NCBI RefSeq assembly: GCF_036365525.1
Contig: NC_090384.1
Location: 55,363,895-55,427,894, forward strand
Origin: Heterodontus francisci
Lineage: Eukaryota
Direction of reading: 5' to 3'
DNA: 64,000 nucleotides
Of this stretch, positions 1 through 46,361 are shown piece after piece. The position numbers and the translations under genes are program-made. Every line of letters begins with the position of its first letter. Within the stretch, counting starts at the first letter, position 1. A model generated the notes under the pieces. It made no database searches, had not been told where the DNA came from, and worked only from the letters and a program-made list of their open reading frames with translations.

Positions 1-760
1 CACACCTGAAGATTCTATACCCTGGAATATTGAGCTGCCAGTCCTGCCCCTCCCTCAACCATGTCGATGTGACAGCAATAATATCATAATGCCATGTGCT
101 AATCAACGCCCTGAATTTATCTGCCTTACTAGTAAGACTCCTTGCATTAAAATAGATGCAATCCAGCCTTGCGTTTTTCACTTGTGCCTTAACAGGTCTA
201 TATTTGCTCTGCCTTCCAGACTGACAGTTTCTCTTCTACATTTGACTGTGCATCACCCCCTACTGTACCTCACTCTGTATCCCATCCCCCTGCCAAATTA
301 GTTTAAGCCACCACCCACCCCAACAGCACTAGCAAACCTCCCAGCAAGGATGTCGGTCCGGTTCAGGTGCGACCCATCCAACCTTTACAGGTCCTACCTT
401 TGCCAGAAACAGACCCAGTGATCCAGGAAACTAAAGCCCTCCCTCCTGCACCAACTCCTTAGCCATGCATTCATCTGCTCTATCCTCCTATTCCTATACT
501 CACTAGCACGTGGCACCGGGAGTATTCCAGAGATTACAACATTTGAGCTCCTGCTTGTTAATCTGCTACCTAGCTCCCTAAATCCTTGCTGCAGGACCTC
601 ATCCCTCTTTCTACCTACATCGTTGGTACCAATGTGTACCACCACCTCTGACTGTTCACCCTCTCCCTTCAGAATGTCCTGCAGCCGCTCCAAGACACCC
701 CTGACCCTCGCACCAGGGAGGCAACATACCATCCTGGAGTCTCGTTTGCAGCCACAGCCA
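1..760 (-). mobile_element. CR1/HER1 LINE 5' part (ORF1 SGNH-esterase and start of ORF2)
   Basis: ORF 394-918 contains [29 protein letters not shown], near-identical to ORF1 at 34301-34981. Confidence 0.85.
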
Positions 761-4267: not shown

Positions 4268-4309
4268 CTCCTTCTGGTATGTTTTCATAATCTGTATGAT
4301 CAGCTGAAC
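4268..4309 (-). CDS. Micro-exon with tyrosine motif ([14 protein letters not shown])
   Basis: tctctctttag|GTTCAGCT...GAAGGAG|gtaaag; 42 nt, phase 1-1, 268 nt downstream of the last C1 exon; encodes TDYENI. Confidence 0.7.
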
Positions 4310-7300
4310 CTAAAGAGAGAAATTACCTGTTTAAACTCGACATTCATCAAATTAAACATTTCCAATGTGAGGGTATTAAGTAACTCATTTAATATTTTTA
4401 AACTAATTGAAATCACCAAAATTAACTATTTTCACCATCAATAAAAAAATTGTGTTTACTCAATATTAAGTTTCAATGTGAAATAAAGCTTCAAATGAAT
4501 GCTTTGAGTTCAACAAAACAATCACTAGTGCAATATAACATTTTTGCTCTGAATCGGAATCCAATAACAACATTCACCTTGAAGGAGTAATTTGAAGTTT
4601 TTCTCTTGAATTTCCTTTGTTTCTATGTGAAGCACCTCACATCTGATGGAACTATCATGATCATTTTCAGTTGTAGTAAATTGTGTACTCGTAACTGATG
4701 AAAATAAACCATCATCAGCAATCACAGGAGGGCTGTTAATCACTGAACAAGGTGTCCCATTTTTAAACCACTTTACTTGGACTTCAGCGGGAGCATAGCT
4801 TGTCAATGAGATACTGAGTGATATAGGCTGATTAACTCCAGGCAGTTCTGGATCAGCTTTAATAACAGACAAGTTCGGAGATAAAGCTGAAAAACAAATA
4901 AAAGGTTTTGTTAAGAATGTTAATAAGAATGTTTAGCCATTGAAGCAAACTGATTAATCTTCAATATGAGCAAAATGAAAACAAAGGGTGCTTTTTTTAG
5001 TCTGTGATATACCTAATTAATTAAGGGAAAGTCTAGATCTCATGAACCTGTGCAATATTACTATTAGATTGAAATATTTTCTATAAATATGCAACTCATA
5101 TTTACAGCAAAGAATGTTTTGAGAACATTGATCTCAAAGTGAAGATGGTGGTAAGATATTTTGGTGTACCACCTCGAGGCAGCATATAGTGACAGACAGC
5201 TTTACCCAGGGGTGTCAAAGGAACTCCTGAACAACAAAGGCTACTGCATTAATACTCAGACAGAAAGTAGAAGGAAAAATAGACCAAAACAAAACTCAAT
5301 TCAAAATCATTACAATTTTAGTTATTTGATCCAATTCCTGCTATGGGTATCTGTACTAAAAGTTTATTTTATAAAAAAGTTGAAGAAAGTTCAAAAGTAA
5401 AATGCACCCCCAGTGATGTCTTTAAGTATGAAAAAAAGGTTCAGAACTTGTGTGATTTAGCTTCTATAAACGTAATTACTTTAAAAGATGCATTCAGTTT
5501 GAATATATTTTTGAAGTGCATATGAATGACCTTAAATCATACATCATTCCTTTAAGTCAGTTCAATTGAAGTTTTCCTGTCCCATTTATCTAATTCCAAT
5601 TTGCTCAGAGCTATTTATTGTGAAATGGCTCATAAATGTGTGCCCCCTCATTCCCCATCTCCAGCATCAAGTGGAATTTTGCCAGATTATTTCTGTGTCA
5701 GCTAGTAACTTCAGCAAATTAATCACAAACATTTAAATATAAAGTGAAATTTTTCAAACTTGTGAAGAGAAGTATCAGGGTAAAACATACCTGAAAGTGT
5801 TAAAAATGCCTGTTTTCTAATTGGAATTTTTAACTTATCATGTATCACATGGAAGGAAAATTCTTGATCAAAATCTAGAGCAGTTGGTGTTACTTGCAAA
5901 CGGGAAGACATCCTATAACATCCACTTATGTCCTTCTCGGGTCCTTTAACTGTGATCCCTTTACATATCTCTTTTTCTTTCTGTCGCCAAGTTGTATTGA
6001 TGTCATGTGGGTAAAAGTTAACGACATTGCAAATGAAAGCTTGTTTTGCACCATACATAGCTTCTGGTGGGTCCAGTTTGATGTCTTCAACGAATGGAAT
6101 TCCTGTTCAAATTGCATGAAACTACAGTTGATTATGATAATGAATCGTCATCTTGTTTAAGGATCAAAAAGGAGATTCAAGAGATCTGTCTTTATTCCCC
6201 AAATACTGAATATTTAAATGACGACAGACATTCAATCTACATTGTGCAACTTGGGCTTTGTTCCAAAGATATAGTGGCATTTAAAAAAAACTCTTTACCT
6301 TTTTTGCTATTTATTTGATAATGTGATGGAGTTTATGTGCGTAGACTGCTATCTGAACAGTTGATCTGTTGAATGTACTGCCAGGTGCACTGACCTTAGA
6401 TTCAAAGCTTGCATTTTTCAGAGACAGTCCTTTACTGGAAAATGAAACCAAAGGCTTCAGAGTTCTGGGGAAATCAGAACTGGATGGAACCAGGTAAAAC
6501 AGTCATGTGATCAGAGTGGATCAGAGGCATGTGACTGGAGCTCATATTACAGACTGCAGTGTTGAAGCAAGCAGCAAGCAGTTGTTTTAAAAAAGACAAG
6601 CTACTGTGATTGGAACCTGTTTTCTAGGAGATGACCCCTGGGCAAATATGAGTTGCTACATCTGTTTTTGGTGCCTTAAAGAGTTACTAGTGGAACCACA
6701 CCATCAAGACTGCTGGGGAGATAGTGGTAATGTCACTGAACTAGTAATGTAGAGACCCAGGAAGACAGGATCTGGATATTTATCTGAAAGGATTTTGTGG
6801 CCGTAACTGGTGCCACCTTTGCCGAAAGGACTGCCCAAAAGATCCGTAAGATCTATCTTTGTTGCATCTGATAATTAATATGCAATCTTTAACAGTGATT
6901 TAACTGTTAGTTCATGTTTAAATTGCTTTTGGTTTGAGCATTACAGTAATTTTATGAAAGTGTATTTTGTCCGTTATTTTTCCAATTGGAGTCAGTCAGT
7001 GGATTGGATTCTTTTGGTTTGTGATCTCTACAGGATCATGACAATAATCACGGCTAAGCTGGGATGTCACAATTTAGGGCCAATGGAGTCACTGAAAGGA
7101 ACAATGTCAATTTAATGAATTTGAAACATTTACAAATATTCTTTTCAATGTTCCATAATCGGTACTATAAAGTTGCACTTCTTATTAGAATCATACCTTT
7201 TATTTTCAAAAAATGAATGGATGAGATAGGCTTGTTTGAAGTTTCAGAGTGAAGGATTTGCATTTTGAACTCTTTTCCATGGTCCTGATAAGTTGGAATG

Positions 7301-10300
7301 AATGTCCTTCTGGACAATCGAGAGTACAAACCAGTTGTTTCATCCCACTCAACTTCATCTGTTTCAACTCCATCTTTAGTTTTATCAAACCCTTTGAACC
7401 AGAATATCTGATTGTCTTCTGGATAGAAGCCATATGCTTTGCAGTAAAGTGTTACAGGTTTTCCCATCTCTGGGCAAAGGGGATCTGTTTTGATTTCTGC
7501 GACCTTTGGCACCGACACTGCACTCATACAAAAGAAACAGTGTTAATGAGATTGTATAACTGAAAAAAACACCACAATTTAAAGCATAGTACGCCTTGAT
7601 AAATTTTCAAACATCAATTTCTTGAACAAAATATCCTCTTCCTCTGCCCCTCTTTTCCCCCTCAGACTAGTATAGGCCCCGACTGTAGCCACTGCTCCAG
7701 TATCTCTTGGAAGTGACACACATTATGTAAGAGACTGAACATTGAGTGCTGGGAGGCTATTCAAGCCGAATCCTGCATTCACCAGATAAGCACCTACACC
7801 TTCCGATAGTGGTCAATGGACAATAACAGTTCACCTCCCCAGAGGCCAAGACAGACTGTAGCACTCCCCCAGTACCTCAGCTGAGGTCAGATAACTCAGG
7901 CATCACACTTGCAACCTTACAGATATAAATCACTAGTTAGGCCCCAGCTGGAGTACTGCGTTCAGTTCTGGGCACTGCACATTGGGAAGGATGTCAAAGC
8001 CTTAGAGAGTGTGCACAAGAGATTTACTAGAATGGTACCAAGATTGAGGGATTTCGGTTATGTGGAGAGACTGGAGAAGCTGCAATTGTTCCCCTTAGAA
8101 CAGTGAAGGTTAAGAGCAGATTTGATAAAGGTGTTTAATATCATGCATGCCTGCGAATGTGGTGGAGGCAGATTCAATCGTGGCTTTCAAAAGGGAATTG
8201 GATAATTATCTGAAGAGAGAAGACTTGCAAGGCTACCGGGAAAAAGTGGGGGAGTGTGACAAGCTGAGTTGCTCTTGCAGAAAGCTGGCATGGACATCAC
8301 CGGCTGAATGGCCTTCTTCTGTGCTATAACCATTCTATGATTCTACTTCTCTATTGCTTAGGCACAAATTGGGTGGCACATTCTCCCAATGAGCTAACAG
8401 GGAGCTGCAAATAATCATTTCCAACTCCATTCAGCTTAGTTCCAGTACTACTCTTGCCTCTGAAGAAGGCCTGGATACTAGTGCCATTCCACGGCTTGAG
8501 GAAATAATTTGCAGCTATAGGTCAGTACAATACTCAGAGCACTGCAGTACTCAAAGCGACTGTGTGCACCTCTTCAGATGGACATAAAAGATCTCACTGC
8601 ACTTTTTCCCATAAGCAAGGACTTCTTCTGGCCCAGCCAACATTTCACCCTCAAACAAAATCTGCCGAAAAAAAGATGAACTGGTCATTCATCACATTGC
8701 TGTTTATAGGAAATTGCACAAACTACCTGCCTTGTTTGCCTGCAAAACAACCAAGACAACACTTCAAAACTAATTCATGAGCAACCAAGGGCTGAATATT
8801 GTTCAGTTCCCTATGTCGGGCTTCATGGCGGATGAGGTTGAATCCGAAAATCCCCTCAATGGCTGCCATCGCCACTTCCATCCCACCCCCAACAGTCCCC
8901 CGTTCCTTCCTGCCATTACGCTTCTCTTTGCCGCTCCCTCCTGCGCCCGTCTTCTTGCTGCTCACTACCCGCTGCCTTCCCTTACCCACTCGCTCCGGTC
9001 TCGCCGCTCGCTCCCCACTTTTCCCCACCTCCCCAGCCGCTGGCTCCATGCCGCGCCACTTCTAGCCTCTCAGCCACATGCTCCTACGTTCAAGCATTCT
9101 CCGCCCTGCGCCCTGAAGAAGCAAGGTGGGCCGCGAGGGGTAACGGAACAACACAGGAACGAGTGGCCGAGAGGAGGGAAGTGGTGGACCTGGAGCTAGC
9201 AGCTAGGGGTGGGGGGAAATGGCCAGTGGGGAAGGGGTGGGGGAGCAGAAAGTGTTGAGGGCGGGAGCAAGTAACTTGAGGGGGGGGCGGGGAAAGAGAG
9301 CTGGTGGGTGGAGCAAGTGGCTGAGGGAAGGCAGCAGCATGGCAGGAATCGAGATGGGTGAAGTGGTGATTGAAGCAGGGATGTTGGGAGGGAGCAGGGT
9401 ACTGTTCGGGTGAATAGAGACAGCTATTGAGGGGTGAGGATGTCATTGCGTGGAGACGTCATGCGCGCATTCGTACTGGCAGGCTGGAAAACGTTTGCAT
9501 GTATTGATGACGTCTGCGATCGCTCTGCGCATGCTCTGTGTTGCTAGGAGTCACTTTGCAATATTTTATTTATTGCTGTTCTAAACCAAGAACAACTCCA
9601 AATGGAATAACTTTCACAGATAGCAAAAAAGATCAACTGGGATTTTCTGTTTGTTAAAATATAGAAAAAACAAATCAAGTTAATTTTAGTTTTAGGTGAG
9701 ATTTCTATTTAACATTTGTTGTTTTCTTTATTCCCCTTGTCTCCAATCAGATCACTCCAGGTCATGGCCTTTCACCATGGACCTTTGCCAATGTAGCAAA
9801 AACCCAGTAGAATTATCAGCACCAACTTCAATCTGTGTTTTAGTTTCCGATTATTAATGTTTACCAATTTACAATTTTATGTATTTTTAAAATGAATTTA
9901 AATGAAATACCCAAGTCAATTATGGCCCAGATTTTGCTGTCAAAATAATGACGAGGCTAATGGCACATGCCGTCTTTTATGCACAAACCGTACGACAACA
10001 TTAGGTAAGGGGTTGATGTGTGGTTAAGCCCAAACATACAAATGTTGCTGTTTGAGTTGCCATCAGTTTTGCCAAACAGCATCCCGCTGTTTGCCTCACC
10101 ATTGAAATGCACTGAATGGCCTAAAGTTGCTGTATTTCCACAGTAGATATGCACTAAACATGCCACAGAAAGTTTAGGCTGATCTGAAGTGAGGCAAGGA
10201 ACCTGTCATAGAGCTATCTTTAATCAAGCATGGATTCAGACAAAGGGAGCTTTTTTAAGCGGTCTAAAGTTCTTTTAACAATGTGTTGATCACTGCCAAT

Positions 10301-13300: not shown

Positions 13301-16300
13301 TAAGGGGTTGCTTTCCCTGCACACTCAGGTCACAGATACTCATTTTTCCTTGCAACTATGTTATCAGCTTGCAGCAACTTGCCACACAAAAAATGTAAAA
13401 GCTTGAACTTGCAAGAGGAAGTCCAACTAAGGGCTGTTAGATGCCCTGCCACAGCCGTTTATGGCCCTATATGTTTCTTTAAGAAATGTTCAGAAAAAAC
13501 TAGCCATCATATACTCCAGTTGGAACATGGTTACTTACCCAGTCGTTGGAGTAGCCAGTCAACTTGCAATGGCTCTATTAGGCTCTCATGTTCTACCTGG
13601 CACGTGTATTTATTCCCAACATCAGCTCTGGTAGGTACACTTTTCACACTACTTGTCAAGTAATAGAGTCCATCATTTCCCAGAGTTGGCTCACTAACTT
13701 CAGGTTCTTCTGCCATTTTCTCACCATTTTTGAGCCAGGTAACTGTGATTTCACTGGGGTAAAAAGAATGGATTGGACAGTTTAAAGTCATGGTTTCTCC
13801 TGCAACTGCTTTTTCTGTGCCACATGTTATCGTGTCCAGTTTTGGAGTAGCTGAAAAAGAAACATGAAAAAAAAACTTAATGGAGGCTTTAACAAAAGCA
13901 GAGTAAAGACACTGTGGATTAGATTCTACCCTATCCACAGCCAATGGCCAGAAAGTATATTCCATTGTGTTCTGAGAATTCTGAAGCAGGACTCGAGTAT
14001 AAAACAAAAGGTTACACAACAACCTCAAGTAAGAAATACAGCGCTCAGGAGACTTCATTCGTCACAGGGTTTTCCAAATAAAATCATCAATTTTGCTGCA
14101 TTGCAAAAAATAAGGAAACAGTATCTGTAAACAAATCTAATCTATTGTTCTGTACAAGGAATTGTCAAAAATTTACATACCTTTAACCTTCAGAGTTATT
14201 TCTTTCTGTTGCTGAATACCAGTGCATTCATGATAAACCTTACAGATGTACTTTGTGTCCTGGTCTTGCAGTATATCTGGTAGAATAACTAGTACACTGG
14301 TGATGCTGTATGTTTTATCTTCATACTGCAACTCACTTATGTAATGGTTATACTTGGACTTCTTCCCATTTTCATTAGAAAAGGTTGTTCTGTTGCTCTG
14401 ATCCAGCCTAATAATTTCTTTTCTCTCATTATTTTTTCTGCTTTGTTCCCATATGATAATTAATGGTCTTGGTTTAAATCCATTGATTGAACAAGTCAAG
14501 GCCACAAGTTCATTCTGATTGATGTAAGGTGGTGCCACAATGTTTGAAATCTTTGGTGGCACTTTGGGAAAAAGAAACAAAGAAATCAACTATTTAAACT
14601 GAAGAATTTTCACAAATTAATAAAAACAAGGAAATATTATTTTACAATCTGAATTTTCTATGATTTAGAGTCTACAGATGGCAGAACTGCATTACCACTA
14701 TCAAGCACATGAATGTCACTTCATATGTACACAAATATACATATTAATAAAAACACAGAATGGAAACAGGTAGCATAAATAATAATGATTAAAATCAAAT
14801 GTTCATGCATTACCTCCTTTAACATTCAGTATTACAGTTTTTGTAGCAAGTTGCAGAAGAGTATTATGGTCAATCCCAAGAATTAATTCGGCCCCATCAT
14901 CTTTGAATACATCAGGATACATTTTGACGTTGCATTTTACATTGGTAGTCCCATCACTGTTAGCTTCAAATACTGGTTCCAAACACTTAAAGGATGTGTC
15001 TTCTTCATTACCCCCATTGATAAGAAGCTGCACTTCAGCTGGTTTTACTTTGCTCTTTGTGATCTGGTCCGGGTAATGTGCGTCAAAAATTTTCTTTTTG
15101 TTTTCATCCCCCTTCCTCTTTAAGAATAAAATAATTGTAATCTCCTTAGGTCTAAATCCAGTAACTTGGCAACTGAAGATGGCTTCCTCAAAATGGCGAA
15201 TGATGGGAGGTTTGCTGAATTCACTAATTTTTGGAGAAACTAATAAAAAAAATTAAAACTTGACAATCGACATATTCACATTTGTTTACCCAGTTTTATT
15301 TTCTTGCTAGACCACAGGCAGAAGGTCATTTACAAGACACGATGTAGGACAGCAGTTTCTGCAAGGTTTTGCTGTCCTTTTCAATCAATTCAGCCAAAAT
15401 GGCCAAAGCAGTGCAAATTACATCCAGTGGAAATTGAATTTCCATGAACTTATGTGCTAGTTTAAAAAAAAACTTTGTGCTAGAAGCCAGCCCCATTCAC
15501 AAAACCGGCCACCCCCCAAGTTCAAATTAATCACCACTGCAAGCCCCGCTAACTGCACCTGACTGCGAGCACGCGTGGAGGCTCTTAAAATTAATAATAG
15601 GAACAAAAAATGCTGGAAACACTCAGTTCTGATGGGTCATCCACCTGAGACATTGATTCTGTCTCTTTCTCCACAGATGCTGCCAGATGTACTGAGTGTT
15701 TCCAGCATTTATTGTTTTTATTTCATATTTCCAGTATCCACAGTAGTTTGCTTTTCTCTTAAAATTAAGCTTTTTGGGGGCAAGGGTGGTCATTTGGTGG
15801 GGGGCGGGGGGGGGGGGGGGGGTGGTAGGGAAAGCGTCTTGGGTCCTGGAGGTGGTTGGGGAAGCAGTGGTGGCCCTCTATCGGGCACCTTGTGCCCGAT
15901 CGTCAGTGCCCCCCTCCGGAGTGTGGAGAGGCCGACAGCTCTCACTAGGTGGCCTTTCCCAGCTCCAGGGTGCCCGCTTTCTATGGGTAAAATCCCCATG
16001 GAGGCAGACAATTCTAAAGAGGGTGCAGGAGCAGAGAAAACTGTGTATATGTGCATAAATCATTGAAGGTGGCAGGACAAGTTGAGAGAGCAGTTAATAG
16101 AGCATCCTAGGCTTCATTAATAAGGACATTGGGCTGGATTTTACGTTGGGTGGATGGGAGCTGGCCACTGATGTAAAAGTTGGTGGCGAACCCACCTGCC
16201 TAGCCCGGGGATCTGTCCCGCATTTTACGAGTCACCGGGCTTTAATTGTTCCGAGGCAGGACTTCCACCTGCTTGAGGGAGGAAATCCCGCCTCACTGAA

Positions 16301-22300: not shown

Positions 22301-25300
22301 GGGGTTGCACAAACAGAGAGACCTAGGGATATGTGTGCACAAAACATTGAGGATGGTAGGGCAGGTTGAGAAAGCGATTAAAAAAAGCTTTGGGATCCTG
22401 GTCTTTATAAATAGAGGCATATAAAAGCAAGGAAGTTTTTATGAAATAAAAACAGAAAGTGCTGGAAAAAGACAACAGATCTGGCAGCATCTGTGGAGAG
22501 AGAATCAGAATTAACTTTTCAGGTCTGTGACCTTGCATCAGAACAGTTATTATGAACCTTCATAAAACACTGGTTTGGCCACAACTGCAGTGCTGTGTCC
22601 AATTCTGGGCACTGCACTTTAGGAAGGATGTGAACGACTTTGAGAGGTCACAGAATAGATTAGAATGGTTCCAGGGATGAGGGACTTCAGTTATGTGGAT
22701 AAGTTGGAGAAGCTGGTGTTGGACTCCTTAGAGCAGAGGCGATTGAGAGATTTCATAGAGGTGTTCAAAATCATGAGGGGTCTAGTCATGGTAGAGAGCC
22801 ACTGTTCCCATTGGCGAAGGGGTTGAGAACCAAAGGGGAAGAAAACAGAGGCAATAGAACCAAAGGCGAAATGTGGAAAAACCAGCGAGCGGTTGTGATC
22901 TGAAATGCACTGCCTGAAAGGATGGTGGAGGGAGATTCAATCAAGGCTTTCAAAAAAGGGAATTAGATAAGCGTACAAAGGGGAAAGAATTGCAGGGCTA
23001 TACGGAAAGGTCATGGAGTGGGACAGGCTGGATTGCTCTTGCAGACAGCCAGCATGGGCTTGATGAGTGGCCTCCTCTGTGTTATAACCATTCTAGGTTT
23101 CTACACAAGTATCGTAAGGAGTATTTTTTAAAGCAAAATTTTGGAAAATCACTGCTTGATTGTGCTGATTCATGACAGAGTTTTACATCTGGCAATTTGC
23201 AAATTAGTTTTGAGTGGAAATGCTCAGAAAATGTTTGGGGCATAGTTTTGCGCTGGATTGCCAATTGCAGCCAAAATGGAAACTCCAGGTCCAGTTATCT
23301 AATGAACACCATGGTGGGAGCACAATCACAAGAACTGTTATGCTTCAAGGGGAAGGCCCAACACAACCTAATTTGTGGAAAACATGCAATAAACAGCCAA
23401 AGAATTACAAATACACATTTCACATTGCACAATCAAAAGATTTCACCAGTCAAAACATTACCTTTTTTAAATTTCAGGCAATATAAATATAGACAACACA
23501 GTACTCCACATAACAGCAACGTAGCAAATACACTTCCAACAACTGATCCTGCTACTGAAGTTATTTTGTGCTCTGAAATATGAAACATAAATACAGAAAT
23601 ATTTAGACAAATATTATGTCACAAGAAATAAATTGTTTCACTTGCACAGAATTTAAGAGGCTGCTCCATTTTTGTAAATTATAAACTAAGATACTTAAAC
23701 ACAGTAAAGTCTTTAAAGAATTTGAAATTACAGATAAGTGCAATTAAATGTCCTCTAAATGATGGCCGAGAAATTTCATGTGAGTTGCACCAAGGAAAAA
23801 TAAGTTTCAGCTGCCAATGGCCCAGAGAGGTATTTACACTGCAATTTTATGGGTCAGTTTATTTGCATGCGTGTTATAGTGAAAAAATAGTTGTAACATG
23901 CTGGTTTTTTTTTTTTTAGAGATACAGCACTGAAACAGGCCCTTCGGCCCACCGAGTCTGTGCTGACCATCAACCATCCATTTATACTAATCCTACACTA
24001 ATCTCATATTCCTACCACATCCCCACCTGTCCCTATATTTCCCTACCACCTACCTATACTAGTGGCAATTTATAATGGCCAATTTACCTATCAACCTGCA
24101 AGTCTTTGGCATGTGGGAGGAAACCGGAGCACCCGGAGAAAACCCACGCAAACACAGGGAGAACTTGCAAACTCCACACAGGCAGTACCCAGAATTGAAC
24201 CCGGCTCGCTGGAGCTGTGAGGCTGCGGTGCTAACCACTGCGCCTGTGTTGCATGGAAATTACAATTAAGCCTTTAAAAAGCAAATTTCAGCGGAAGACT
24301 GCAGTAGCAGCAGGCAAGTAAGGAACCGTGCTCAAGTGTCTCTCCCAATCCTTTGTGCACCTTGTTTCCCCTTTCTAATGCTACATTCTGGTTCCACTCC
24401 CCTGCTGAATTAGTTTAAACCCTCTCCCACAGCACTAGCAAAACACCCCACAAGGACATTGGTCCAAGCCCTGTTGAGGTGCAACCCATTCAGCCTGTAC
24501 AGGTCCCACCTCCCCAATGTCCCAGGAATATAAACACCTCCCTCCTGCACAACCTCCAGCCACGAATTCATCTGCCCTATCCTCCTATTTCTATACTCAC
24601 CAGTGCTTGGCATTGGAAGTCAACCTGCAGATTACTACCTCTGAGGTTCTGCTTCTTAAATCTCTTTCCAGCTTCCTAAAGCTGCCTGCTGGAACTCTTT
24701 CTACTATGTCGTTGGTACTGATGTGGACCACGACCGCTGGCTGTTCACCCTGCCCCCTCATAGTGCTCTACAGCTGCTCAATGACATCCTTGAACCTGGC
24801 TCTAGGGAGGCAACATACAATCCTGGGATTCGTATGCAGCCTCAGAAATGCCTGTCTGATCACCTAACTATAAAATTCCCAGAACCTCAGCCACCGATAG
24901 TGCTGCGGACTTGGCTCTGATTGTACTCTCCTGAGGAACGATCACCCTCACCAGTATTCAGAACTGAATATCAGTTAGAGAATGGGATGCTCTGAAGGGA
25001 TTCCTGCGCTATGCCTGGTCTTCCTTGACTGTTTGGCTGTCACCCATTCCTTCTCTGGCTGCACTCTCTTAAGCTGTGGGATGACCACCTCCTGGAATGT
25101 GCTATGCATGAAACTTTTAGCCTTGCGGATGTACTGCAGTAACTACAGCGCCTTCCGAGCTTCTCCACCCGACGACGTTTCCTCCACACGTGGTTATCCG
25201 GTATATAGGAAGTGCCCTGAAGTTCCTACATGGAACAGGATGTGCATTCCACATGTCTGAGGGGCACCTTCATAGCCCTATTTATTAGACTAACTAAACA

Positions 25301-40300: not shown

Positions 40301-43300
40301 ATAACTGGGGGGGAAGTGGGAAGGATCATGCAGCTGTTGAGTCTATTGTGGCCCTGGTAGTCAGTCTCTGTATTTGTTGCTTCCAAAGGCGGATGATATC
40401 CCAAGCGGTACAGATGGTAATGCTGCCCAACAAAGGGTGCACCCTGGTATCCCCTGCGGTCAGAGCCCCTCTCTCAGGGAATATGAAACATGAATATGCA
40501 TGACAGGACTTTAGCGAAGCCGTATGAGAATGATAGACTAGGATATCAGAAGCCCGCTGAACTCCAGTAGGATCCCTGGAGCAATTGGTGAGTGGAGATG
40601 ATCGGGAATGTCCAGCCTGGGTCAGGTGGTGTGCCTGACCAGGGTCCAAAAGGAGGAACTGAAGTGGGACCAGTGGGGCAACGTTAGTAGATTATTTAGC
40701 ATTAGGATACATTAACAGTCTTAGAAGGAAGAAGGAAGCACTGTAGTTGTGGGAACCAGGGTATGATGGGATGCGTGGCAATGGTTATGGGAAGCTGTAC
40801 AACTCAGAACTTTAACTGCCTTTATATCTGTGTAAACAACTTGGCCTTGAGAGAAGACTGCGATTGCAGGAGGCACAGGATATTATAAACTGTGAAGACA
40901 CCAAGCGAAGGAGACAACAGGTGGGGGGTGGGTGGATGGGTGGGTGGGATGATTAGTGAGACAATACACTTCAGTTTATTGATCAAGCTGCAGCTTTGGA
41001 ATGTATCCGGGAGTGCAGATGGGGTTGTATGGACAAATGAGTAATTGTTATTGTATTCTATAAATTTGTACCAGATTCGGTTTCTGTGAGAAGCCTCTGG
41101 ACGTTTCACCAGGCACGTCTCCCTTGCACCGCTGTTTGAATAAACCTTTATTTACTTTAATCCTGTGGACTTGAGACCAGTTATTTTCCCCACAACACCA
41201 CACACGTTAAAAGTGCCTGTAAGCTAAGTTATTGAAAGCTGGGCAGCACTGACAGCAATCACACATGTTAAATTATAAATGAACTTTTAAAGCTTTGGTA
41301 TCCCACAAGCAGCCAGAAGGAAACTAGGTTCCTAACAGCTCCTTTATACTTATTGCATTAGATGCAATGCTTCATTTGCTTTCTCTTGTATTCAACAGCA
41401 GTTTATCCTGTTGATCAGTGAGCTGCCAAAGCCTCTATATGCTGCTTTATTAAAGGAAAGGAGAGTTCAGAAGACTACCAAAGATTTGTAGGTTGATAGA
41501 TAAATTGGCCATTGTAAAAATTGCCCCTAGTGTAGGTAGGTGGTAGGAGAATTGAGGGGAAAAAGTGGGGATGTGAGAGGGAAAAATGGGATTAATGTAG
41601 CATTAGTATAAATGGGTGGTTGATGGTCGGCGTGGACTCGGTGGGCCGAAGGGCCTGTTTCGGTGTTGTATTTCTCTATGACTACCAATCAGCTGTTTAA
41701 AAAGTGTGTTACTATTCAGGAGACTATAGACCTAATAGCAAGTATGAATGATGCAATCATGACCCTTATCCCCTTCTGAGTGGTGCATCATGCTTTGAAA
41801 AAGTTAGTTTACAATTTAGAGCAAGAAATGAGTGGAAGTCAAAAATGAAATAAAAACAGGATTCTGTGACTGCATTATCTCACTGTTGATCTTTTATCCA
41901 TTTGATAGTTTGCAGATCATTTCACACATCAACTCCCTCCAAGGTTGGTGTATCTGTTGATTCTCTCTTCACCCCTTTTCCTATTTTTCCAACATTACTA
42001 AATGTTTGTTTACCTCTTGGCCATACGTTTGCTGAAGGGTACCCACCCAAAATGTCATTTAAAAAAAAATATTTATTTCCAGTATTTTCAAATCAGTCTG
42101 GGCACAAGCAGATTCCACTGTACAGACAATCTGAAGATAATTCAGCTTAATTACTGTTAATAGCAGTTTTATAAAATTACTATAAGCAATCTCCCTATGA
42201 CTCTAACACGCAGTATTATGGAACAGCTTTTAAACATGCATATTGTTGTCTCCTATTCTGAAGTTTAGAAATCTTATGGCTGGTTGATCTGAATAATCAT
42301 TATGGTATACAATAGTCTTTTCATTGTGGAATAATAAAGGATGAATTCTTGATTTAAGTCGGATGCAAGCTACAGTACAAATGCAATGTTAAATAATGGG
42401 CATGTCATTTAAACACGTGTAAGCTTCAACAAAAGCGCACTGAAAAATATTATGCAAAGAAGAGAACATACCATTCACTGTGAGTTTAGTTTCCTTTGAC
42501 GTATTGACAAATGAACGGTGATTCATGATGCACCTGTACCGATTACCATCGTCATCCAATTTTGGTTTAATTCTCACTCTACTAGAAACATTGAAGGTTC
42601 CATCACTGTTGGAAGTTAATGCACCAGTGCAGACTTCTTCTGTTAGTTTCTTAGTTTCCCCATTTGCTATCTTTTCCCAGAAGAGCTCATGCTGCTGAGG
42701 ATAAAATCCAGTAACATCACATTTCACAGACCCCTCTGAACCAGTCAGAATAGTAATGTGTTCTGTGGACAAATAGATCACTGGTGCAGCTGCATTAAAG
42801 ATAAATAGAAGAACATGTCAGACAGGTTGAAGGCACACTGCCATAAATATCTAAAGCCAGGTCGAAGTTAATTTGTACAAACATATACTAAAAACACCAC
42901 TTTCCTTCCTTCAGCTATCTCACTCATATAATAATCTTCTTCCAGAATGTGCACAATTATATCTGGGTTAAATTAAGTAACTACTCCAATACCTCAAATG
43001 TAGATTGAAACATTTCAAATTCCTCCATCATCAACAAGCATGAGGAGGAATGGGGAAAGAGATGAGGACAAAGCAGGGGAAGATGAGGAGGAGGAAGAAG
43101 ACAGAAGGAGAATGACAACAACTTGTTTATATAACCTCTAAAGAATTTAAAAGAAAAAAACCATGCATTTATATAGCATCTTTCGCAACCACAGGACATC
43201 CCAAAGTGCTTTACAGCTAATGAAATGTTTTTAAAGTGTGGTCATTGTTGTAATGTAGAAAACATGGCAGCCAATTTGCACACTGCAAATTCTCACAGAA

Positions 43301-46300
43301 AGCAATGTGATATGACCAGATAATCTATTTTTGTGATGTAGATTGAGGGATAAACATTGGGCAGGATACCAAGGGTAACTCCCCTACTTTTCTTGGTAAT
43401 AGTGCTGTGGGATCTTCCACATCACCTGAGAGGATGGACAGGGCCTCAGTTTAATGTCTTATCTGACAGACAGCACCTCCAACAGTACAAAACTCCCTCA
43501 GTGGAATGTCAGCTTTTGATTTTTTGGCTCAAGTCCTTGAGCAGGCCTTAAACCCACAACCTTCTAACTTAAAGACAAGAGTGCTACCAAATGAGCTACA
43601 AGCAACACGAAAGATATTTAGGAAGAAATGCCAGAACACAGGAACAAGGTGATTGAAGGAATGGTGGGACAGAGGATTGCAGGATACTTAACAAGCCATA
43701 GTCAGAAGAACAGAGTTTTCAGGGTGGGGTCAGTAGGTCTGGAGAAGATTACAGAGATATGGAAGGCTAAGGCCATAAAAAGGACTTGTATCATTTAAAA
43801 TTCATACACCAAAAAGAACATCTCACAAACAAATATTTACCCCATCGATATTTTCTAAATCCTGGACAAACCTGCCAGAAAGTCGACAATATTTTCATGT
43901 TAGAATTGCTGCAGAAATTGGCCTTGACCAGTTGTAGATTTCTCAGGGCTATGGAAATAATTAACCCTCAAAGGGTTTAGAGTGATGATAAAGAAAGCCT
44001 CAGATTTCCATAGAAAATAGGAGCAGGAGTAGGCCATTTGGCTCTTCGAGCCTGCTCCACCATTCATTATGATCATGGCTGATCATCCAACTCAGTAACC
44101 TGTTCCCACTTTCCCCCCATATCCTTTGATCCCTTTTGCTCCAAGAGCTATATCTAACTCCTTCTTGAAAACATACAATGTTTTGGCCTAAACTGCTTTC
44201 TGTGGTAACGAATTCCACAGGCTCACTACACTCTGGGTGAAGAAATCTCTCCTCATCTCAGTCCTGAAAGCTTTACCCCGTATCCTTAAGACTATGACCC
44301 CTGGTGCTGGACTCCCCCACCATCTGGAACATCCTTCCTGCATTTACTCTGTCAAATCCTGTTAGATTTTATAGGTTTCTATGAGATCCCCCCTCACTCT
44401 TCTGAACTCCAGCGAATATAATCCTGACCAACTCAATCGCTCCTCATAGGTCAGTCCCACTATCCCAGGAATCAGTCTGGTAAACCTTCACTGCACTCCC
44501 TCTGTAGCAAGAACATCCTTCCTCAGATAAGGAGACCAAAACTGCACACAATATTCCAGGCGCAGTCTCACCAAGATCCTGTATAATAGCAGCAAGACAT
44601 CCCTGCTCCTATGCTCTAATCCTTTCGCTGTGAAGGCCAACATACCATTTGCCTTTTTACCGCCTGTTGCACCTGCATGCTTACCTTCAGCGATTGGTGA
44701 ACGAGAACACTCAGGTCTCATTGCATATTCCCCTCTCTCAGTTTATAGACGTTCAGATAATAATTCGCCTTCCGGTTTTTGCTACCAAAGTGGATAACCT
44801 CACATTTATCCACATTATACTGCATCTGCCATGCATTTGCCCACTCACTCAACTTGTCCAAATCACCCTGAAGCCTCTCTGCATCCTCCTCACAACTCAC
44901 CCTCCCACCCAGTTTTGTGTCATCTGTAAATCTGGAGATATTACATTTAGTTCCCTCATCTAAATCATTAATATATATTGTAAATCGCTGGGGTCCTAGC
45001 ACCGATCCCTGCGGTACCCCACTCGACACTGCCTACCATTCGGAAAAAGACCCATTTATTCCTACTCTTTATTTCCTGTCTGCCAACCAATTTTCTATCC
45101 ATCGCAATACACTACCCCCAATCCCACACGCTTTAATTTTACACGCTAATCTCTTATGTGGGACTTTGCCAAACGCCTTCTGAAAGTCCAAATAAACCAC
45201 ATCCACTGGCTCCCCCCTCATCAACTCTACTAGTTATATCCTCGAAGAATTCTAGTAGATTTTTCAAGCACAATTTCCCTTTTGTAAATCCATGCTGACT
45301 CTGTCCAATTCTATCACTGTTCTCCAAGTACTCTGCTATAAAATCTTTGATAATCTTCCATTTGCAAATCTACCATATTAATATAAATGTTTTGTGCAAC
45401 TTTTTAAACTATGTTTTATAGTGATACTCAAGGGATTGTGCATGTAATTTGTATTTTTTCTTACTGGTTATGTAGACTTCATAAATCTCGATATTGGGAG
45501 TATGCTGATTGGTTGTTTTAGGTTGTTTGTTCTTTGGGAGCTGTTTGCGGGCACGTCTTGTGCAGCCTATTAGTTTTCTGTTCTGAGCAGATGACATAAT
45601 AAAAATTTACCAGAGCACTCTTTTTGAAGAAGTAGTTTTTGTGTTCTTTTCTGCACATTACAGTTGTGTTGCTACCAAAGAAAACTCTTCTATTCTGCCC
45701 CAACATTGCAACTCACCTTTAACCCCAGAGAATTACCTCCGCTACACCATTACAAGCTTCCCATTTCCCAGACTTCCTGCTAGTCTCAGGGGTTAGACTG
45801 CAAATTCCACGTCAAAATTAAGACTGCCCAAACTCATTGAACACATTGCTAGGAGACGGAGCAAAATGTCATTCCATCAGTCTGAGCTGCATTAAAACCC
45901 AGGTTTCATAAGTGAAAAGGTAGTGTGCCAACCCAAAGAATCACCTACTATATATTGAGCATATTTATTTTACAGCTGTAAAGGTGTTTCCACAATACAA
46001 CAGATAACATTTTGGACACTCTTACCTGACACCTGCATTTCCGATCTCTTTTCTACCTTATCAGGTGTGACAAATACAGTGCAAGTGTACTCCCCTTCTT
46101 CATCAAACTGTATGTTTGGAAGATATAGTGAAGCAACTCCTCCCTGTAAATCAGCATCAGACATTTTTGCTCCTTGTCTTTTTGATGAATGTATTCCTCC
46201 ATTAAAGACATAGATTTCTTTCTTCTCAGGCCCAAATGCCCACTGGACCCCTACATTTGTTAGGTCGATAGCTCCTCCGACAGTAAATATACATTCAAGG

Positions 46301-46361
46301 GAAACATCTTCCTTCGCCAAGACTTCCTTTGGGCTTGTAAATATGTTCACCTCCAAGGTTT
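4268..46361 (-). CDS. NCR3LG1: B7-H6/NCR3LG1-like multi-exon gene, partial: IgV-IgC1-TM-(IgC1)x6-Tyr motif, ~956 aa over 10 exons; leader and last exon not located
   Basis: Exons 46026-46361, 42472-42789, 23462-23572, 14814-15239, 14181-14561, 13539-13850, 7197-7517, 5791-6102, 4578-4886 and 4268-4309. All have AG/GT borders, lengths divisible by 3, phase 1-1 junctions and no stops. V and first C1 resemble human B7-H6 as I recall it ([26 protein letters not shown]; [10 protein letters not shown]). The symbol means 'like'; orthology is not tested. Confidence 0.8.
4578..4886 (-). CDS. Exon: post-TM IgC1 domain 6 (B-strand Cys to Ile)
   Basis: tttcag|CTTTATCT...CTTCAAG|gtgaa; 309 nt. [30 protein letters not shown]. 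Confidence 0.88.
5791..6102 (-). CDS. Exon: post-TM IgC1 domain 5 (F-strand Cys to Phe)
   Basis: aacag|GAATTCCA...CTTTCAG|gtatg; 312 nt. [29 protein letters not shown]. Confidence 0.88.
6322..7043. mobile_element. Solo LTR
   Basis: Begins TGTGATG and ends CATGACA (imperfect inverted termini); flanked by the 4-bp direct repeat ATAA (6318-6321, 7044-7047). Confidence 0.65.
7197..7517 (-). CDS. Exon: post-TM IgC1 domain 4 (F-strand Cys to Met)
   Basis: tgcag|TGTCGGTG...ATAAAAG|gtatg; 321 nt. [27 protein letters not shown]. Confidence 0.88.
7900..8345 (+). mobile_element. CR1 LINE 3' fragment
   Basis: [16 protein letters not shown] motif; tail ending ATTCTATGATTCTA. Confidence 0.85.
8370..8790 (+). 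mobile_element. DeuSINE (SacSINE1-like) remnant
   Basis: Deu-domain-like CTCTTCAGATGGACATAAAAGATCTCACTGCAC; related to the copy at 43150-43610. Confidence 0.45.
10600..13285 (+). mobile_element. Degenerate LINE of the CR1/L2 superclade (endonuclease-RT), distinct from the HER1-type copies
   Basis: Frameshifted pieces [34 protein letters not shown]; 3' end CACCACCACCTTCTCAAG...CCCACATCCCATGAA. Confidence 0.8.
13539..13850 (-). CDS. Exon: post-TM IgC1 domain 3
   Basis: tttcag|CTACTCCA...CGACTGG|gtaagt; 312 nt. [35 protein letters not shown]; canonical C1 set. Confidence 0.92.
14181..14561 (-). CDS. Exon: post-TM IgC1 domain 2
   Basis: caaag|TGCCACCA...GTTAAAG|gtatg; 381 nt. [29 protein letters not shown]; both Cys present. 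Confidence 0.88.
14814..15239 (-). CDS. Exon: post-TM IgC1-like domain 1 (degenerate, long insertion)
   Basis: ttattag|TTTCTCCA...AAAGGAG|gtaat; 426 nt. [46 protein letters not shown]; lacks the C-strand Trp and F-strand Cys. Confidence 0.85.
15595..15755 (+). mobile_element. Penelope-derived short element with 13-bp TSD
   Basis: CACAGATGCTGCCAGA family; flanked by CTCTTAAAATTAA at 15582-15594 and 15756-15768. Confidence 0.65.
16131..16848. mobile_element. Harbinger-like MITE
   Basis: Imperfect TIRs GGGCTGGATTTTACG / CGTAAATTTCCGGCC; an internal ~180 bp is near-identical to 15826-16005. Confidence 0.6.
18346..20700 (-). mobile_element. CR1 LINE fragment (endonuclease-RT)
   Basis: Minus-strand ORFs with [22 protein letters not shown] and [10 protein letters not shown]. 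Confidence 0.85.
19042..19382 (+). mobile_element. HE1-type tRNA-derived V-SINE
   Basis: A box TGGCGCAGTGG, B box GGTTCGATTCC, V-core TCTGCGTGGGTTTTCTCCGGGTGCTCC, CR1-derived tail and poly(A). Confidence 0.9.
20866..21060. repeat. Minisatellite, ~5 copies of a ~37-45 bp unit (TACACTGAATGC..GTTGACCC..CCCCATG)
   Basis: Directly visible imperfect tandem repeats. Confidence 0.8.
21740..23100 (+). mobile_element. Degenerate CR1 RT fragment containing a Penelope-derived insert (~22446-22546)
   Basis: [12 protein letters not shown] and SADDTQL motifs; insert flanked by TTATGAA repeats. Confidence 0.75.
23462..23572 (-). CDS. Exon: transmembrane segment ([37 protein letters not shown])
   Basis: tatttcag|AGCAC...AAAAAAG|gtaatg; 111 nt, phase 1-1, in frame with both flanking Ig exons. 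~27 uncharged residues followed by KFKK (positive-inside). Absent from the ORF track. Confidence 0.85.
23905..24244 (-). mobile_element. HE1-type V-SINE
   Basis: Reverse complement of 19042-19382, with poly(T). Confidence 0.9.
24370..25260 (-). mobile_element. CR1 ORF1 (esterase) remnant
   Basis: [13 protein letters not shown] motif; homologous to 34060-34981. Confidence 0.7.
27718..28068 (-). mobile_element. HE1-type V-SINE
   Basis: Full-length reverse-complement copy of 19042-19382. Confidence 0.9.
29017..29543 (+). repeat. 5' LTR
   Basis: TGAAGTGGGACCAG...CACAACA; AATAAA at ~29486. Confidence 0.9.
29547..29564 (+). promoter_or_regulatory. Primer-binding site, tRNA-Ser
   Basis: TGGCATAGTTGGCAGGAT versus TGGCGTAGTCGGCAGGAT, the complement of the vertebrate tRNA-Ser 3' end; 2 mismatches, both CpG-type transitions. 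Confidence 0.8.
31406..31500 (+). mobile_element. Penelope-derived short element with hammerhead-like core and 16-bp TSD
   Basis: CCGAAGA-AGGGTCACTGACCC-GAAACGTT; TSD TAGGAGGAACTAAGTT at 31390-31405 and 31501-31516. Confidence 0.75.
31680..33300 (+). mobile_element. 5'-truncated CR1 LINE (RT) nested in the ERV
   Basis: ORFs 31767-32660 and 32664-33212 with YRPISL, QGSMLGP and FTDD. Confidence 0.9.
33780..37970 (+). mobile_element. Near full-length CR1/HER1 LINE (ORF1 Zn-finger/SGNH esterase; ORF2 endonuclease-RT, frameshifted) nested in the ERV
   Basis: [13 protein letters not shown].., IVIGDS..HVGTND; [26 protein letters not shown]; ATTCTGTG tail. Confidence 0.92.
38560..40560 (+). pseudogene. 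Disrupted env-like ORF of the LTR element
   Basis: Non-LINE ORF fragments with N-glycosylation sequons (NIT, NST, NGT) and a terminal hydrophobic segment [13 protein letters not shown], directly upstream of the PPT and 3' LTR. Identity is inferred from position. Confidence 0.45.
39667..40177 (-). mobile_element. Rearranged CR1 fragment inside the env-like region
   Basis: Near-identical to the reverse complement of ~49600-50090 plus tail; has an internal deletion and two micro-inversions. Confidence 0.85.
40648..40658 (+). promoter_or_regulatory. Polypurine tract
   Basis: AAAAGGAGGAA immediately before the 3' LTR TG. Confidence 0.75.
40660..41197 (+). repeat. 3' LTR
   Basis: Direct repeat of 29017-29543 with substitutions and indels. 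Confidence 0.9.
41478..41685 (+). mobile_element. HE1-type SINE, 3' half
   Basis: Matches 19190-19375. Confidence 0.75.
42472..42789 (-). CDS. NCR3LG1: Exon: extracellular IgC1-set domain (B7-H6/tapasin-like)
   Basis: tgcag|CTGCACCA...GTGAATG|gtatg; 318 nt. [37 protein letters not shown]; both Cys present; NVS and NTS sequons. Confidence 0.92.
43150..43610 (-). mobile_element. DeuSINE (SacSINE1-like) with L2-type tail
   Basis: TTTATATAGC..CCCAAAGTGCTTTACA tail, Deu-like core, and a tRNA-like head at the right end. Confidence 0.55.
44010..45350 (-). mobile_element. 5'-truncated CR1 LINE
   Basis: [18 protein letters not shown] and [11 protein letters not shown]. Confidence 0.88.
46026..46361 (-). 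CDS. NCR3LG1: Exon: IgV-set domain (B7-H6-like)
   Basis: tttag|AAACCTTGGAG...GTGTCAG|gtaag; 336 nt. [45 protein letters not shown], with the canonical Cys-Trp-Cys. Confidence 0.92.

What the first reader, a model, noticed from the sequence alone, without database searches (positions are those of the whole stretch)
4268..46361. B7-H6-like membrane protein with six C1-set Ig domains predicted on the cytosolic side
Seen: the exon order on the minus strand is IgV, IgC1, hydrophobic TM exon ending KFKK, six IgC1 exons, then a Tyr-motif exon, all phase 1-1 and in frame (..TVN-EHKIT..CLKFKK-VSPKIS..). Established: C1-set domains (Ig/TCR constant regions, MHC, b2m, tapasin, SIRP, B7-H6) are extracellular or luminal, whereas intracellular Ig folds are typically I-set as in titin. 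B7-H6 is V-C1-TM and is the NKp30 ligand. Inference: this is a type I protein with a B7-H6-like ectodomain and a ~690-aa cytosolic C1 array, possibly a scaffold or reverse-signalling module in shark NK-type immunity. I know of no characterised protein with this topology, although automated annotation may already list it as NCR3LG1-like or uncharacterised.
Basis: partly seen in the sequence, partly recalled or inferred. Interest (0 to 1): 0.93.

Follow-up and report, generated by a model that had tools for sequence, protein, structure and literature searches.

The report
Shark B7-H6 with Ig domains after its membrane anchor
This is a shark copy of the natural-killer-cell ligand gene B7-H6, and its messenger RNA really does place a membrane anchor in front of six or more antibody-type (C1-set) domains, a layout kept from sharks to snakes that by the normal rules puts those domains inside the cell, where this domain type is not known to work.

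Summary
Ten minus-strand exons (V, C1, a 111-nt hydrophobic exon ending KFKK, six more Ig exons, a 42-nt Tyr exon) all have AG/GT borders and lengths divisible by three. RNA contigs from four runs (two organisms, three studies) cover the hydrophobic exon exactly. They join it on one side to the end of the C1 exon and on the other to the start of the first array exon, so this is one gene and the anchor is not skipped in the main transcript.

The layout is not peculiar to this shark. About 30 species share signal peptide, V, C1, one TM, C1 array, acidic linker and a last Ig domain. The list includes a chimaera, sharks, rays, bichir, coelacanth, lungfish, amphibians and a snake. It also includes a nurse-shark sequence deposited as B7H6 and tetrapod proteins that NCBI names NCR3LG1.

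No orthologue has a second TM, and the flanking charges fit a type I orientation. Four of the six array domains lack the canonical disulfide in 16-18 of 18 species, yet they are as conserved as the ectodomain.

A cytosolic location is therefore the best reading, but it is inferred, not shown. Two array domains keep invariant Cys pairs, and a TM-skipping isoform is annotated for a paralogue. The scan noted the same layout at a paralogue 125 kb away (s1-872333). It is a new member of a known but barely described kind.

The parts
46026..46361 (-). IgV exon (B7-H6-like V domain)
   Evidence: AG/GT borders, 336 nt. Pfam V-set E 2.4e-07. Best solved structure is human NCR3LG1/B7-H6, E 2e-10.
42472..42789 (-). 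Membrane-proximal C1-set exon (C1a)
   Evidence: 318 nt, AG/GT. Pfam C1-set 39.6 bits. Best solved structure is B7-H6, E 3e-12. Its last 30 nt sit next to the TM exon in RNA contigs.
23462..23572 (-). Transmembrane exon, hydrophobic core followed by KFKK
   Evidence: 111 nt, AG/GT. RNA contig depth lies only on 23462-23573 in 4 runs, and the exon is joined to C1a and to A1. Organism B carries an in-frame 3-nt insertion here. Orthologues have a TM at the same place.
14814..15239 (-). Array domain A1 (divergent C1-like Ig with a disordered insert)
   Evidence: 426 nt. Weak Pfam C1-set. AF2 pLDDT 82, with Foldseek top matches among C1-set domains. Its first 30 nt are joined to the TM exon in RNA. 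There is no Cys at the F-strand position in 18/18 orthologues.
14181..14561 (-). Array domain A2 (C1-set, both canonical Cys)
   Evidence: 381 nt. Pfam C1-set 33.5 bits. Cys pair present in 18/18. Runs X1-X4 hold 59% of the sampled words of 13539-15239, and 66% of that stretch is exon.
13539..13850 (-). Array domain A3 (C1-set, both canonical Cys)
   Evidence: 312 nt. Pfam C1-set 70.7 bits. The PDB sequence search gives Ig heavy chains, MHC alpha3/beta2m, SIRP and UrIg2. Cys pair present in 18/18.
7197..7517 (-). Array domain A4 (C1-set, F-strand Cys replaced by Met)
   Evidence: 321 nt. Pfam C1-set 32 bits. The F-strand position is M/V/A in 18/18 orthologues and the B-strand Cys is kept in 17/18.
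5791..6102 (-). Array domain A5 (C1-set, F-strand Cys replaced by Phe)
   Evidence: 312 nt. Pfam C1-set 44.7 bits. The F-strand position is Phe in 16/18 and the B-strand Cys is kept in 18/18. PDB hits are Ig constant domains and UrIg2.
4578..4886 (-). Array domain A6 (C1-set, B-strand Cys lost)
   Evidence: 309 nt. Pfam C1-set 36 bits. No column on the B-strand side reaches 9 of 18 Cys; the F-strand Cys is present in 18/18.
4268..4309 (-). 42-nt acidic linker exon with the Tyr motif DYENI
   Evidence: AG/GT, in frame. It matches the orthologues' acidic linker before the last Ig domain, where a Tyr is present in 9 of 10 other sharks, mostly as Y-x-N-I/L. Its use in RNA was not checked directly.

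Best explanation
The window holds most of the orthologue of B7-H6 (NCR3LG1) in a squalomorph shark, in its ancestral long form. Shown: one transcript reads V, C1, a single transmembrane exon, then the C1-set exon A1. Runs also hold the words of A1-A3, and the contig continues about 3 kb beyond the TM, which matches the array plus the last exon and a 3' UTR. Orthologues add a signal peptide and a last Ig domain that lie outside the window. Inferred: the signal peptide sends V-C1 into the ER lumen and on to the cell surface, where by homology it would be an NKp30-type ligand. The hydrophobic exon with its basic C-terminal flank then stops transfer. The roughly 800 residues that follow (six C1-set domains, an acidic Tyr linker and a last Ig domain) therefore stay in the cytosol. 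There they would fold without needing disulfides, since four of the six array domains have lost the canonical pair, and form a long Ig rod. That rod most likely serves as a scaffold or signalling platform; the linker carries a conserved Y-x-N motif of the Grb2-SH2 type. The function of the array is speculation.
For: Exon structure. Domain types. RNA: the TM exon is covered exactly and joined to C1a and A1 in 4 runs from 2 organisms and 3 studies. The X1 contig is 4625 nt long, with 3005 nt on the array side and 1508 nt on the V side. Orthologues with the same order occur in about 30 species. They include an elephant-shark entry (UniRef V9K7L7) that differs from the genome model at several residues. 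From memory this accession series comes from transcripts; I did not check that here. They also include nurse shark QTT61906.1, named B7H6, and NCR3LG1-named proteins of axolotl, frogs and a snake. Each has exactly one TM at about residue 230-330 and none after it. Net charge is -0.9 in the 12 residues before the TM and +2.3 in the 12 after. The canonical Cys pair is present in 18/18 for V, C1a, A2 and A3. It is absent in A1, A4 and A6 in 18/18 and in A5 in 16/18, and the same B- and F-strand Cys are kept in paralogues and tetrapods. The array domains are as conserved as the ectodomain: 50-71% against 60-66% among sharks, and 29-39% against 37-38% between cartilaginous and bony lineages. In the AF2 model of the Heptranchias orthologue all nine Ig domains have pLDDT of about 80-92.
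Against: No experiment shows on which side of the membrane the array lies. A2 and A3 keep both canonical Cys in 18/18 species, which would be expected if they form disulfides in an oxidising compartment. N-glycosylation sequon density and amino-acid composition do not differ between ectodomain and array, so they give no cytosolic signature. RefSeq lists isoform X2 of a paralogue in Carcharodon and Cetorhinus with the TM exon cleanly skipped, which would give a secreted all-Ig protein. Contigs cannot show or exclude a minor TM-skipping form here. The signal peptide of this gene is not in the window.
Confidence: 0.72

Rival explanations
1. The array works outside the cell. The symmetric TM exon would be a cassette, and skipping it yields a secreted V-C1-(C1)n protein, which is the form in which the array domains function. 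The TM-containing form would mainly anchor V-C1, and its array would be a passenger.
For: All exons are phase 1-1, so skipping keeps the frame. TM-skipped isoforms are annotated for a paralogue in two lamniform sharks. A2 and A3 keep invariant Cys pairs. Sequon density and composition resemble the ectodomain.
Against: In all four runs the assembled path includes the TM exon at high contig depth. Elephant-shark and nurse-shark deposited sequences and nearly all RefSeq models of the orthologue include it. Four of the six array domains lack the disulfide in 16-18 of 18 species. The only TM-less orthologue model is an older S. torazame prediction, and the newer model of that species has the TM.
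Confidence: 0.18
2. Two neighbouring genes were merged. One would be a short V-C1-TM B7-H6 gene and the other a separate multi-C1 gene with its own leader.
For: There are large introns (19 kb and 8 kb) full of LINE and SINE copies between the parts.
Against: RNA contigs join the TM exon directly to A1. No leader-like exon was looked for or seen upstream of A1. The same junction stands in deposited sequences of many species.
Confidence: 0.02
3. The array is luminal through an unconventional topology, such as a type II or re-entrant segment or a further TM in the missing exon.
For: All characterised C1-set domains are extracellular or luminal (established knowledge). Cys pairs are kept in A2 and A3.
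Against: Orthologues start with a hydrophobic leader and have a single TM with a basic C-terminal flank. Their last domain and C-terminus are not hydrophobic. V-C1 would then have to be cytosolic although it keeps both disulfides in 18/18.
Confidence: 0.05
4. The array exons are decaying remnants carried along in the transcript without function.
For: Canonical cysteines are lost in four domains.
Against: There are no stops, the splice sites are intact, and conservation equals that of V and C1 over roughly 450 million years. The losses are the same in all lineages, and the C1-set His is kept in every domain. The AF2 folds are confident.
Confidence: 0.03

Closest known systems
Human B7-H6 / NCR3LG1 (ligand of NKp30)
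   Same: A V-set plus C1-set ectodomain followed by one TM. It is the best solved-structure match for both ectodomain exons. Orthologues of the window gene are named B7H6 or NCR3LG1 in nurse shark, axolotl, frogs and a snake.
   Different: From my own knowledge, not tested here, the human protein has about 454 residues and a short non-Ig cytoplasmic tail. The shark gene has six C1-set domains, an acidic Tyr linker and a last Ig domain after the TM.
Long-form B7H6/NCR3LG1 of other non-mammalian jawed vertebrates (for example nurse shark QTT61906.1, elephant shark XP_007885690, coelacanth XP_014340773, Pseudonaja NCR3LG1 X2)
   Same: The same domain order, the same TM position and the same domain-specific cysteine losses. 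The window exons are 47-80% identical to the best shark orthologues.
   Different: It comes from another species; the nearest are Pristiophorus and Heptranchias. The number of array domains varies between lineages: bony fishes have an extra one, and some isoforms skip A1.
UrIg / UrIg2 of elasmobranchs (PMC12227049)
   Same: A non-rearranging V domain followed by many C1-set domains. UrIg2 is among the best PDB matches of C1a, A3 and A5.
   Different: UrIg2 has a VJ-type V domain and its TM follows all the C domains, so its whole Ig chain is extracellular. Here the V is B7-type and the TM sits after the second domain.
Intracellular Ig arrays (titin, obscurin, MyBP-C; I-set)
   Same: A chain of Ig-fold domains on the cytosolic side, mostly without disulfides (inference).
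   Different: Those are I-set domains of muscle or cytoskeletal proteins (established knowledge). Here Pfam and the structure matches say C1-set, and the chain hangs from a type I immune ligand.
Butyrophilins (B7 relatives with a cytosolic B30.2 domain)
   Same: A B7-type V-C ectodomain, one TM and a large folded cytosolic module.
   Different: The cytosolic module there is PRY-SPRY, not Ig. I tested no sequence relation beyond the ectodomain.

Membership tests
B7-H6 / NCR3LG1 | N-terminal V-set domain followed by a C1-set (not C2-set) domain | tested here: met
   Pfam V-set and C1-set on the two exons.
B7-H6 / NCR3LG1 | Closest characterised relative is B7-H6 rather than another B7, tapasin or SIRP | tested here: met
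   Human NCR3LG1 is the top PDB hit for V (2e-10, next CD276 at 6e-09, TAPBPR at 3e-05) and for C1a (3e-12). I built no tree.
B7-H6 / NCR3LG1 | Orthology to genes named B7H6 or NCR3LG1 in other species | tested here: met
   The family was found with exon A3. The V exon is 63% identical to nurse shark B7H6. Tetrapod members are named NCR3LG1 by NCBI. Synteny was not tested.
B7-H6 / NCR3LG1 | Single-pass type I membrane protein | tested here: met
   The TM exon is in the transcript. Orthologues have one TM and a charge bias that fits type I. The leader of this gene is outside the window.
B7-H6 / NCR3LG1 | Binds NKp30 (NCR3) | not testable with these tools
   No receptor sequence of this species was at hand and no binding test was run.
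C1-set Ig domain (PF07654) | Profile score above Pfam's gathering score | tested here: met
   C1a and A2-A6 score 32-71 bits against a cutoff of 21. A1 scores 14.9 bits, below the cutoff, but is C1-like by fold.
C1-set Ig domain (PF07654) | Canonical B-F strand disulfide | tested here: not met
   It is present in C1a, A2 and A3 and missing in A1, A4, A5 and A6, both in the window and in 16-18 of 18 orthologues. The His of the C-x-V-x-H motif is kept throughout.
C1-set Ig domain (PF07654) | Extracellular or luminal location, as in all characterised members | tested here: inconclusive
   Topogenesis rules place the array in the cytosol. There is no experimental test, and sequons and composition are uninformative.
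UrIg / UrIg2 | VJ-type V domain with split leader, and the TM after the last C domain | tested here: not met
   The V domain matches B7-H6, not antigen-receptor V domains. The TM follows the second domain. UrIg2 features are taken from PMC12227049.
Intracellular I-set Ig arrays (titin type) | I-set profile is the best match | tested here: not met
   C1-set is the best Pfam family for every array exon. I-set is absent or far weaker.

The most novel reading that the evidence does not exclude
The post-TM array would be a folded, functional, truly cytosolic chain of C1-set domains. That would be the first case of the antibody/MHC constant-domain type working in the cytosol. It would be ancestral to B7-H6 in jawed vertebrates, kept from chimaeras to snakes and lost in mammals. 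It would couple an NK-cell ligand at the surface to an intracellular partner. One speculative possibility is PRY-SPRY proteins of the TRIM21 or butyrophilin kind, which bind C1-set Fc domains. Another is SH2 adaptors docking at the Y-x-N linker. All this assumes the feature has not yet been analysed in print.
Probability: 0.35. Interest if true: 0.85.

Novelty: new member of a known kind. Interest (0 to 1): 0.62.

Why it matters
B7-H6 is the one NK-cell ligand-receptor pair with NKp30 that can be traced from sharks to humans, and it is a target in cancer immunotherapy. If its ancestral form carries about 800 residues of Ig domains behind the membrane anchor, then the mammalian protein is a truncated derivative, and the original molecule did something on the cytosolic side that is completely unknown. 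It would also break the textbook rule that C1-set domains are extracellular or luminal. It would offer a natural set of Ig constant-type domains that fold without disulfides, which bears on intrabody and protein-engineering work. The question can now be tested directly, because the transcript structure is settled and orthologues exist in tractable species such as axolotl, frogs and catshark.

Tried and rejected
- **Exon A1 against the word-indexed protein collection:** no hit within the allowed length range. This says nothing about longer proteins.
- **Leader exon upstream of 46361:** neither a hydrophobic-ORF-plus-donor scan nor tblastn with orthologues gave a convincing candidate. The leader, and likewise the last Ig exon, lie outside the window.
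- **N-glycosylation sequon density and conservation, ectodomain against array:** observed-to-expected is about 1 in both, and no sequon column is conserved in 9 or more of 18 species in either part. Inconclusive.
- **Amino-acid composition, ectodomain against array:** no clear difference. Inconclusive.
- **Literature:** eight full-text searches found no open paper describing Ig domains behind the TM of B7-H6. The three papers most likely to mention it are not held, so prior description cannot be excluded. They are Flajnik et al. 2012 (PMC3709836), Ohta and Flajnik 2015 (PMC4594805) and Kinlein et al. 2021 (PMC8273117).
- **Two-gene and pseudo-exon readings:** rejected on the RNA junctions and on conservation.
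- **Joined protein left out:** No TM or signal-peptide predictor was run on a joined model of this gene. Full-length database orthologues were used instead, and window exons were searched and aligned one by one.
Full report
**What is in the sequence.** On the minus strand between 46361 and 4268 there are ten open exon-like blocks. I fixed their borders by looking for an AG acceptor, an open frame and an in-phase GT donor. They are V 46361-46026, C1a 42789-42472, TM 23572-23462, A1 15239-14814, A2 14561-14181, A3 13850-13539, A4 7517-7197, A5 6102-5791, A6 4886-4578 and a 42-nt exon at 4309-4268. All have AG/GT borders and lengths divisible by three, so each is phase 1-1 and any combination stays in frame.

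Pfam calls the first exon V-set. It calls C1a and A2-A6 C1-set above the curated cutoff, while A1 is below it. An AlphaFold2 model of A1 with an orthologue alignment is confident (pLDDT 82) apart from an 18-residue insert. Its best Foldseek matches are MHC class II beta2, beta2-microglobulin and B7-H6. The 111-nt exon encodes a roughly 25-residue hydrophobic stretch followed by KFKK. The only changes are the start of C1a (42789, not 42781) and the fact that the gene runs off the window at both ends. tblastn with orthologues finds no last-domain exon below 4268, and I found no leader exon above 46361.

**Is it one transcript?** Runs X1-X4 of organism A hold 59% of the sampled words of 13539-15239, where exons make up 66%.

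In all four runs depth sits on 23462-23573 and is zero in the flanking intron bins, so these are spliced RNA contigs. The letters that continue beyond 23462 are the reverse complement of the first 30 nt of A1. Those beyond 23573 are the reverse complement of the last 30 nt of C1a (compare). In X1 a single 4625-nt contig carries the TM exon at positions 3006-3117. It has 3005 nt on the array side and 1508 nt on the V side. The array plus the Tyr exon make 2103 nt, and the rest fits a last Ig exon and a 3' UTR.

Organism B has four substitutions and an in-frame 3-nt insertion in this exon, as expected for a coding exon under constraint. So the junctions C1a>TM and TM>A1 are real. The two-gene reading and the always-skipped reading both fail. 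Contigs cannot show a minor TM-skipping form, and I could not test for one.

**Relatives.** A search of 1.84 billion representative proteins with exon A3 alone returned hundreds of proteins of about 900-2100 residues with 4-15 C1-like stretches, many with the A3 match at about residue 540-670. I fetched the best and looked up their sources.

They share one plan: hydrophobic leader, V, C1, one TM ending in basic residues, then the same A1-A6 series, an acidic linker and a last Ig domain. Members come from:
- Callorhinchus, and about ten sharks including Carcharodon, Cetorhinus, Scyliorhinus, Mustelus, Rhincodon, Heptranchias and Pristiophorus;
- skates and rays;
- Erpetoichthys, Latimeria and Protopterus;
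- axolotl, newt, a caecilian, several frogs and the snake Pseudonaja.

Most are labelled 'uncharacterized'. Nurse shark QTT61906.1 was deposited as 'natural killer cell cytotoxicity receptor 3 ligand (B7H6)'. NCBI names the axolotl, Pelobates, Ranitomeya and Pseudonaja proteins NCR3LG1. An elephant-shark UniRef entry (V9K7L7) differs from the genome-derived model at several residues yet has the same TM-plus-array order. That suggests an independent source. From memory this accession series comes from transcripts, which I did not check here.

The window's exons are 47-80% identical to the best shark orthologues, closest to Pristiophorus and Heptranchias, so the source is probably a squalomorph shark. 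Both ectodomain exons have human B7-H6 as their best solved-structure match. The array exons match Ig constant domains, MHC alpha3/beta2-microglobulin, SIRP and UrIg2. I therefore file the gene as the B7-H6/NCR3LG1 orthologue in its long form. That fits the paralogue clusters seen in other species.

**Which side of the membrane?** Nothing here is experimental. The argument is the standard one. A cleavable leader puts V-C1 in the lumen, one hydrophobic segment with a basic C-terminal flank stops transfer, and with no further hydrophobic segment the rest stays cytosolic.

I tested what could be tested.
- A hydropathy scan of about 60 family members finds exactly one TM at about residue 230-330 and none after it.
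- In 18 orthologues the 12 residues before the TM have a mean net charge of -0.9 and the 12 after it +2.3.
- An AlphaFold2 model of the Heptranchias orthologue shows nine beta-sandwich domains at pLDDT of about 80-92. Its only low-confidence parts are the leader, the TM region, the A1 insert and the acidic linker.

The cysteine pattern gives mixed evidence. The canonical pair is present in 18/18 for V, C1a, A2 and A3. A1 has no F-strand Cys in any species. A4 has Met, Val or Ala at that position in 18/18. A5 has Phe in 16/18. A6 lacks the B-strand Cys in all. The surviving partner Cys and the C1-set His are conserved, and the same conserved Cys are found in paralogues and tetrapod NCR3LG1. Loss of the disulfide in four of six domains for roughly 450 million years fits a reducing compartment. 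Yet these domains are as conserved as V and C1, so they are not decaying.

Against the cytosolic reading, A2 and A3 keep invariant pairs, and neither sequon density nor composition separates array from ectodomain. In addition, RefSeq lists an isoform of a paralogue in two lamniform sharks with the TM exon cleanly skipped. That would give a secreted all-Ig protein. The one TM-less model of the orthologue itself is an older S. torazame prediction, and the newer model has the TM.

I put the cytosolic reading for the main isoform at about 0.7-0.75. The reading that the array really works in a secreted isoform gets a little under 0.2. The two can coexist.

**How it may work.** By homology, the V-C1 part would be displayed at the surface as an NKp30-family ligand. 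This step is inferred. The array would form a rod of seven Ig domains below the membrane.

Between A6 and the last domain, sharks have a short acidic linker with a Tyr. The window has DYENI, and 9 of 10 other sharks have a Tyr there, mostly as Y-x-N-I/L. That resembles a Grb2-type SH2 site and, in some species, an ITIM or ITSM pattern. Rays and the chimaera lack the Tyr. A scaffold or reverse-signalling role is plausible but untested. The idea that cytosolic PRY-SPRY proteins might bind these C1-set domains is my speculation.

**What is known.** UrIg and UrIg2 show that elasmobranchs have other non-rearranging V-plus-many-C1 proteins, but there the TM follows all C domains (PMC12227049). Eight searches of the open literature found nothing on Ig domains behind the TM of B7-H6. 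A 2026 survey of IgSF evolution mentions NCR3LG1 only for its clustering with TAPBP (PMC13262535). The three papers by the group that deposited the nurse-shark sequence are not in the library. I cannot say whether the feature has been described.

The gene and its layout are in public databases, so this locus is a new member of a known kind. The topological puzzle may be unpublished.

**Limits.** All searches used single exons by reference or full-length database orthologues.

Noticed in passing
window 60682-62933: A perfect 15-nt tandem repeat (unit AGAGGTGAGGGAGGA), about 150 copies at 99% identity. It produces a spurious 775-aa ORF of REEEV repeats on the plus strand.
   Followed up: partly
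window 31767-33212 (+), 36255-37475 (+), 47491-50245 (+), 55754-58801 (-): Long reverse-transcriptase/endonuclease ORFs of LINE elements fill the introns and the upstream region. Many shorter RT fragments lie elsewhere in the 19-kb and 8-kb introns.
   Followed up: no
window 19049-19382 and 23908-24249: Two inverted copies (94-98% complementary, about 335 nt) of a SINE-like element flank the TM exon at a distance. One lies 336 nt upstream of the exon in the C1a-TM intron.
   Followed up: no
window 22877-22954: Summed RNA contig depth is very high here (up to about 5000), coming from many short contigs at 90-95% identity. This is a widely transcribed repeat, not part of the gene.
   Followed up: partly
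window 23492-23494: In the TM exon, organism B (runs X5 and X8) has a G>T change and an in-frame AAA insertion, which is one extra Phe codon on the coding strand.
   Followed up: partly
window 23476-23505: In run X3 the transcript contig breaks inside the TM exon into two contigs that overlap by 30 nt, while X1 from the same sample runs through. This is probably an assembly branch, and its cause is unknown.
   Followed up: no
proteins P0196 and P0200 (Carcharodon, Cetorhinus paralogue, isoform X2): These annotated isoforms skip the TM exon exactly, going from the C1 domain straight to the first array domain. That predicts a secreted all-Ig form of the paralogue.
   Followed up: partly
window 15821-16004 and 16473-16656: A 184-nt direct repeat (94% identity) sits in a GC-rich stretch of the TM-A1 intron with Gly/Pro-rich spurious ORFs.
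   Followed up: no
window 1-3700: This GC-rich region (47-54%) downstream of the Tyr exon has overlapping spurious ORFs and an RT-related fragment at 394-918 (-). No exon of the gene was found there, so the last Ig exon must lie beyond the window start.
   Followed up: partly
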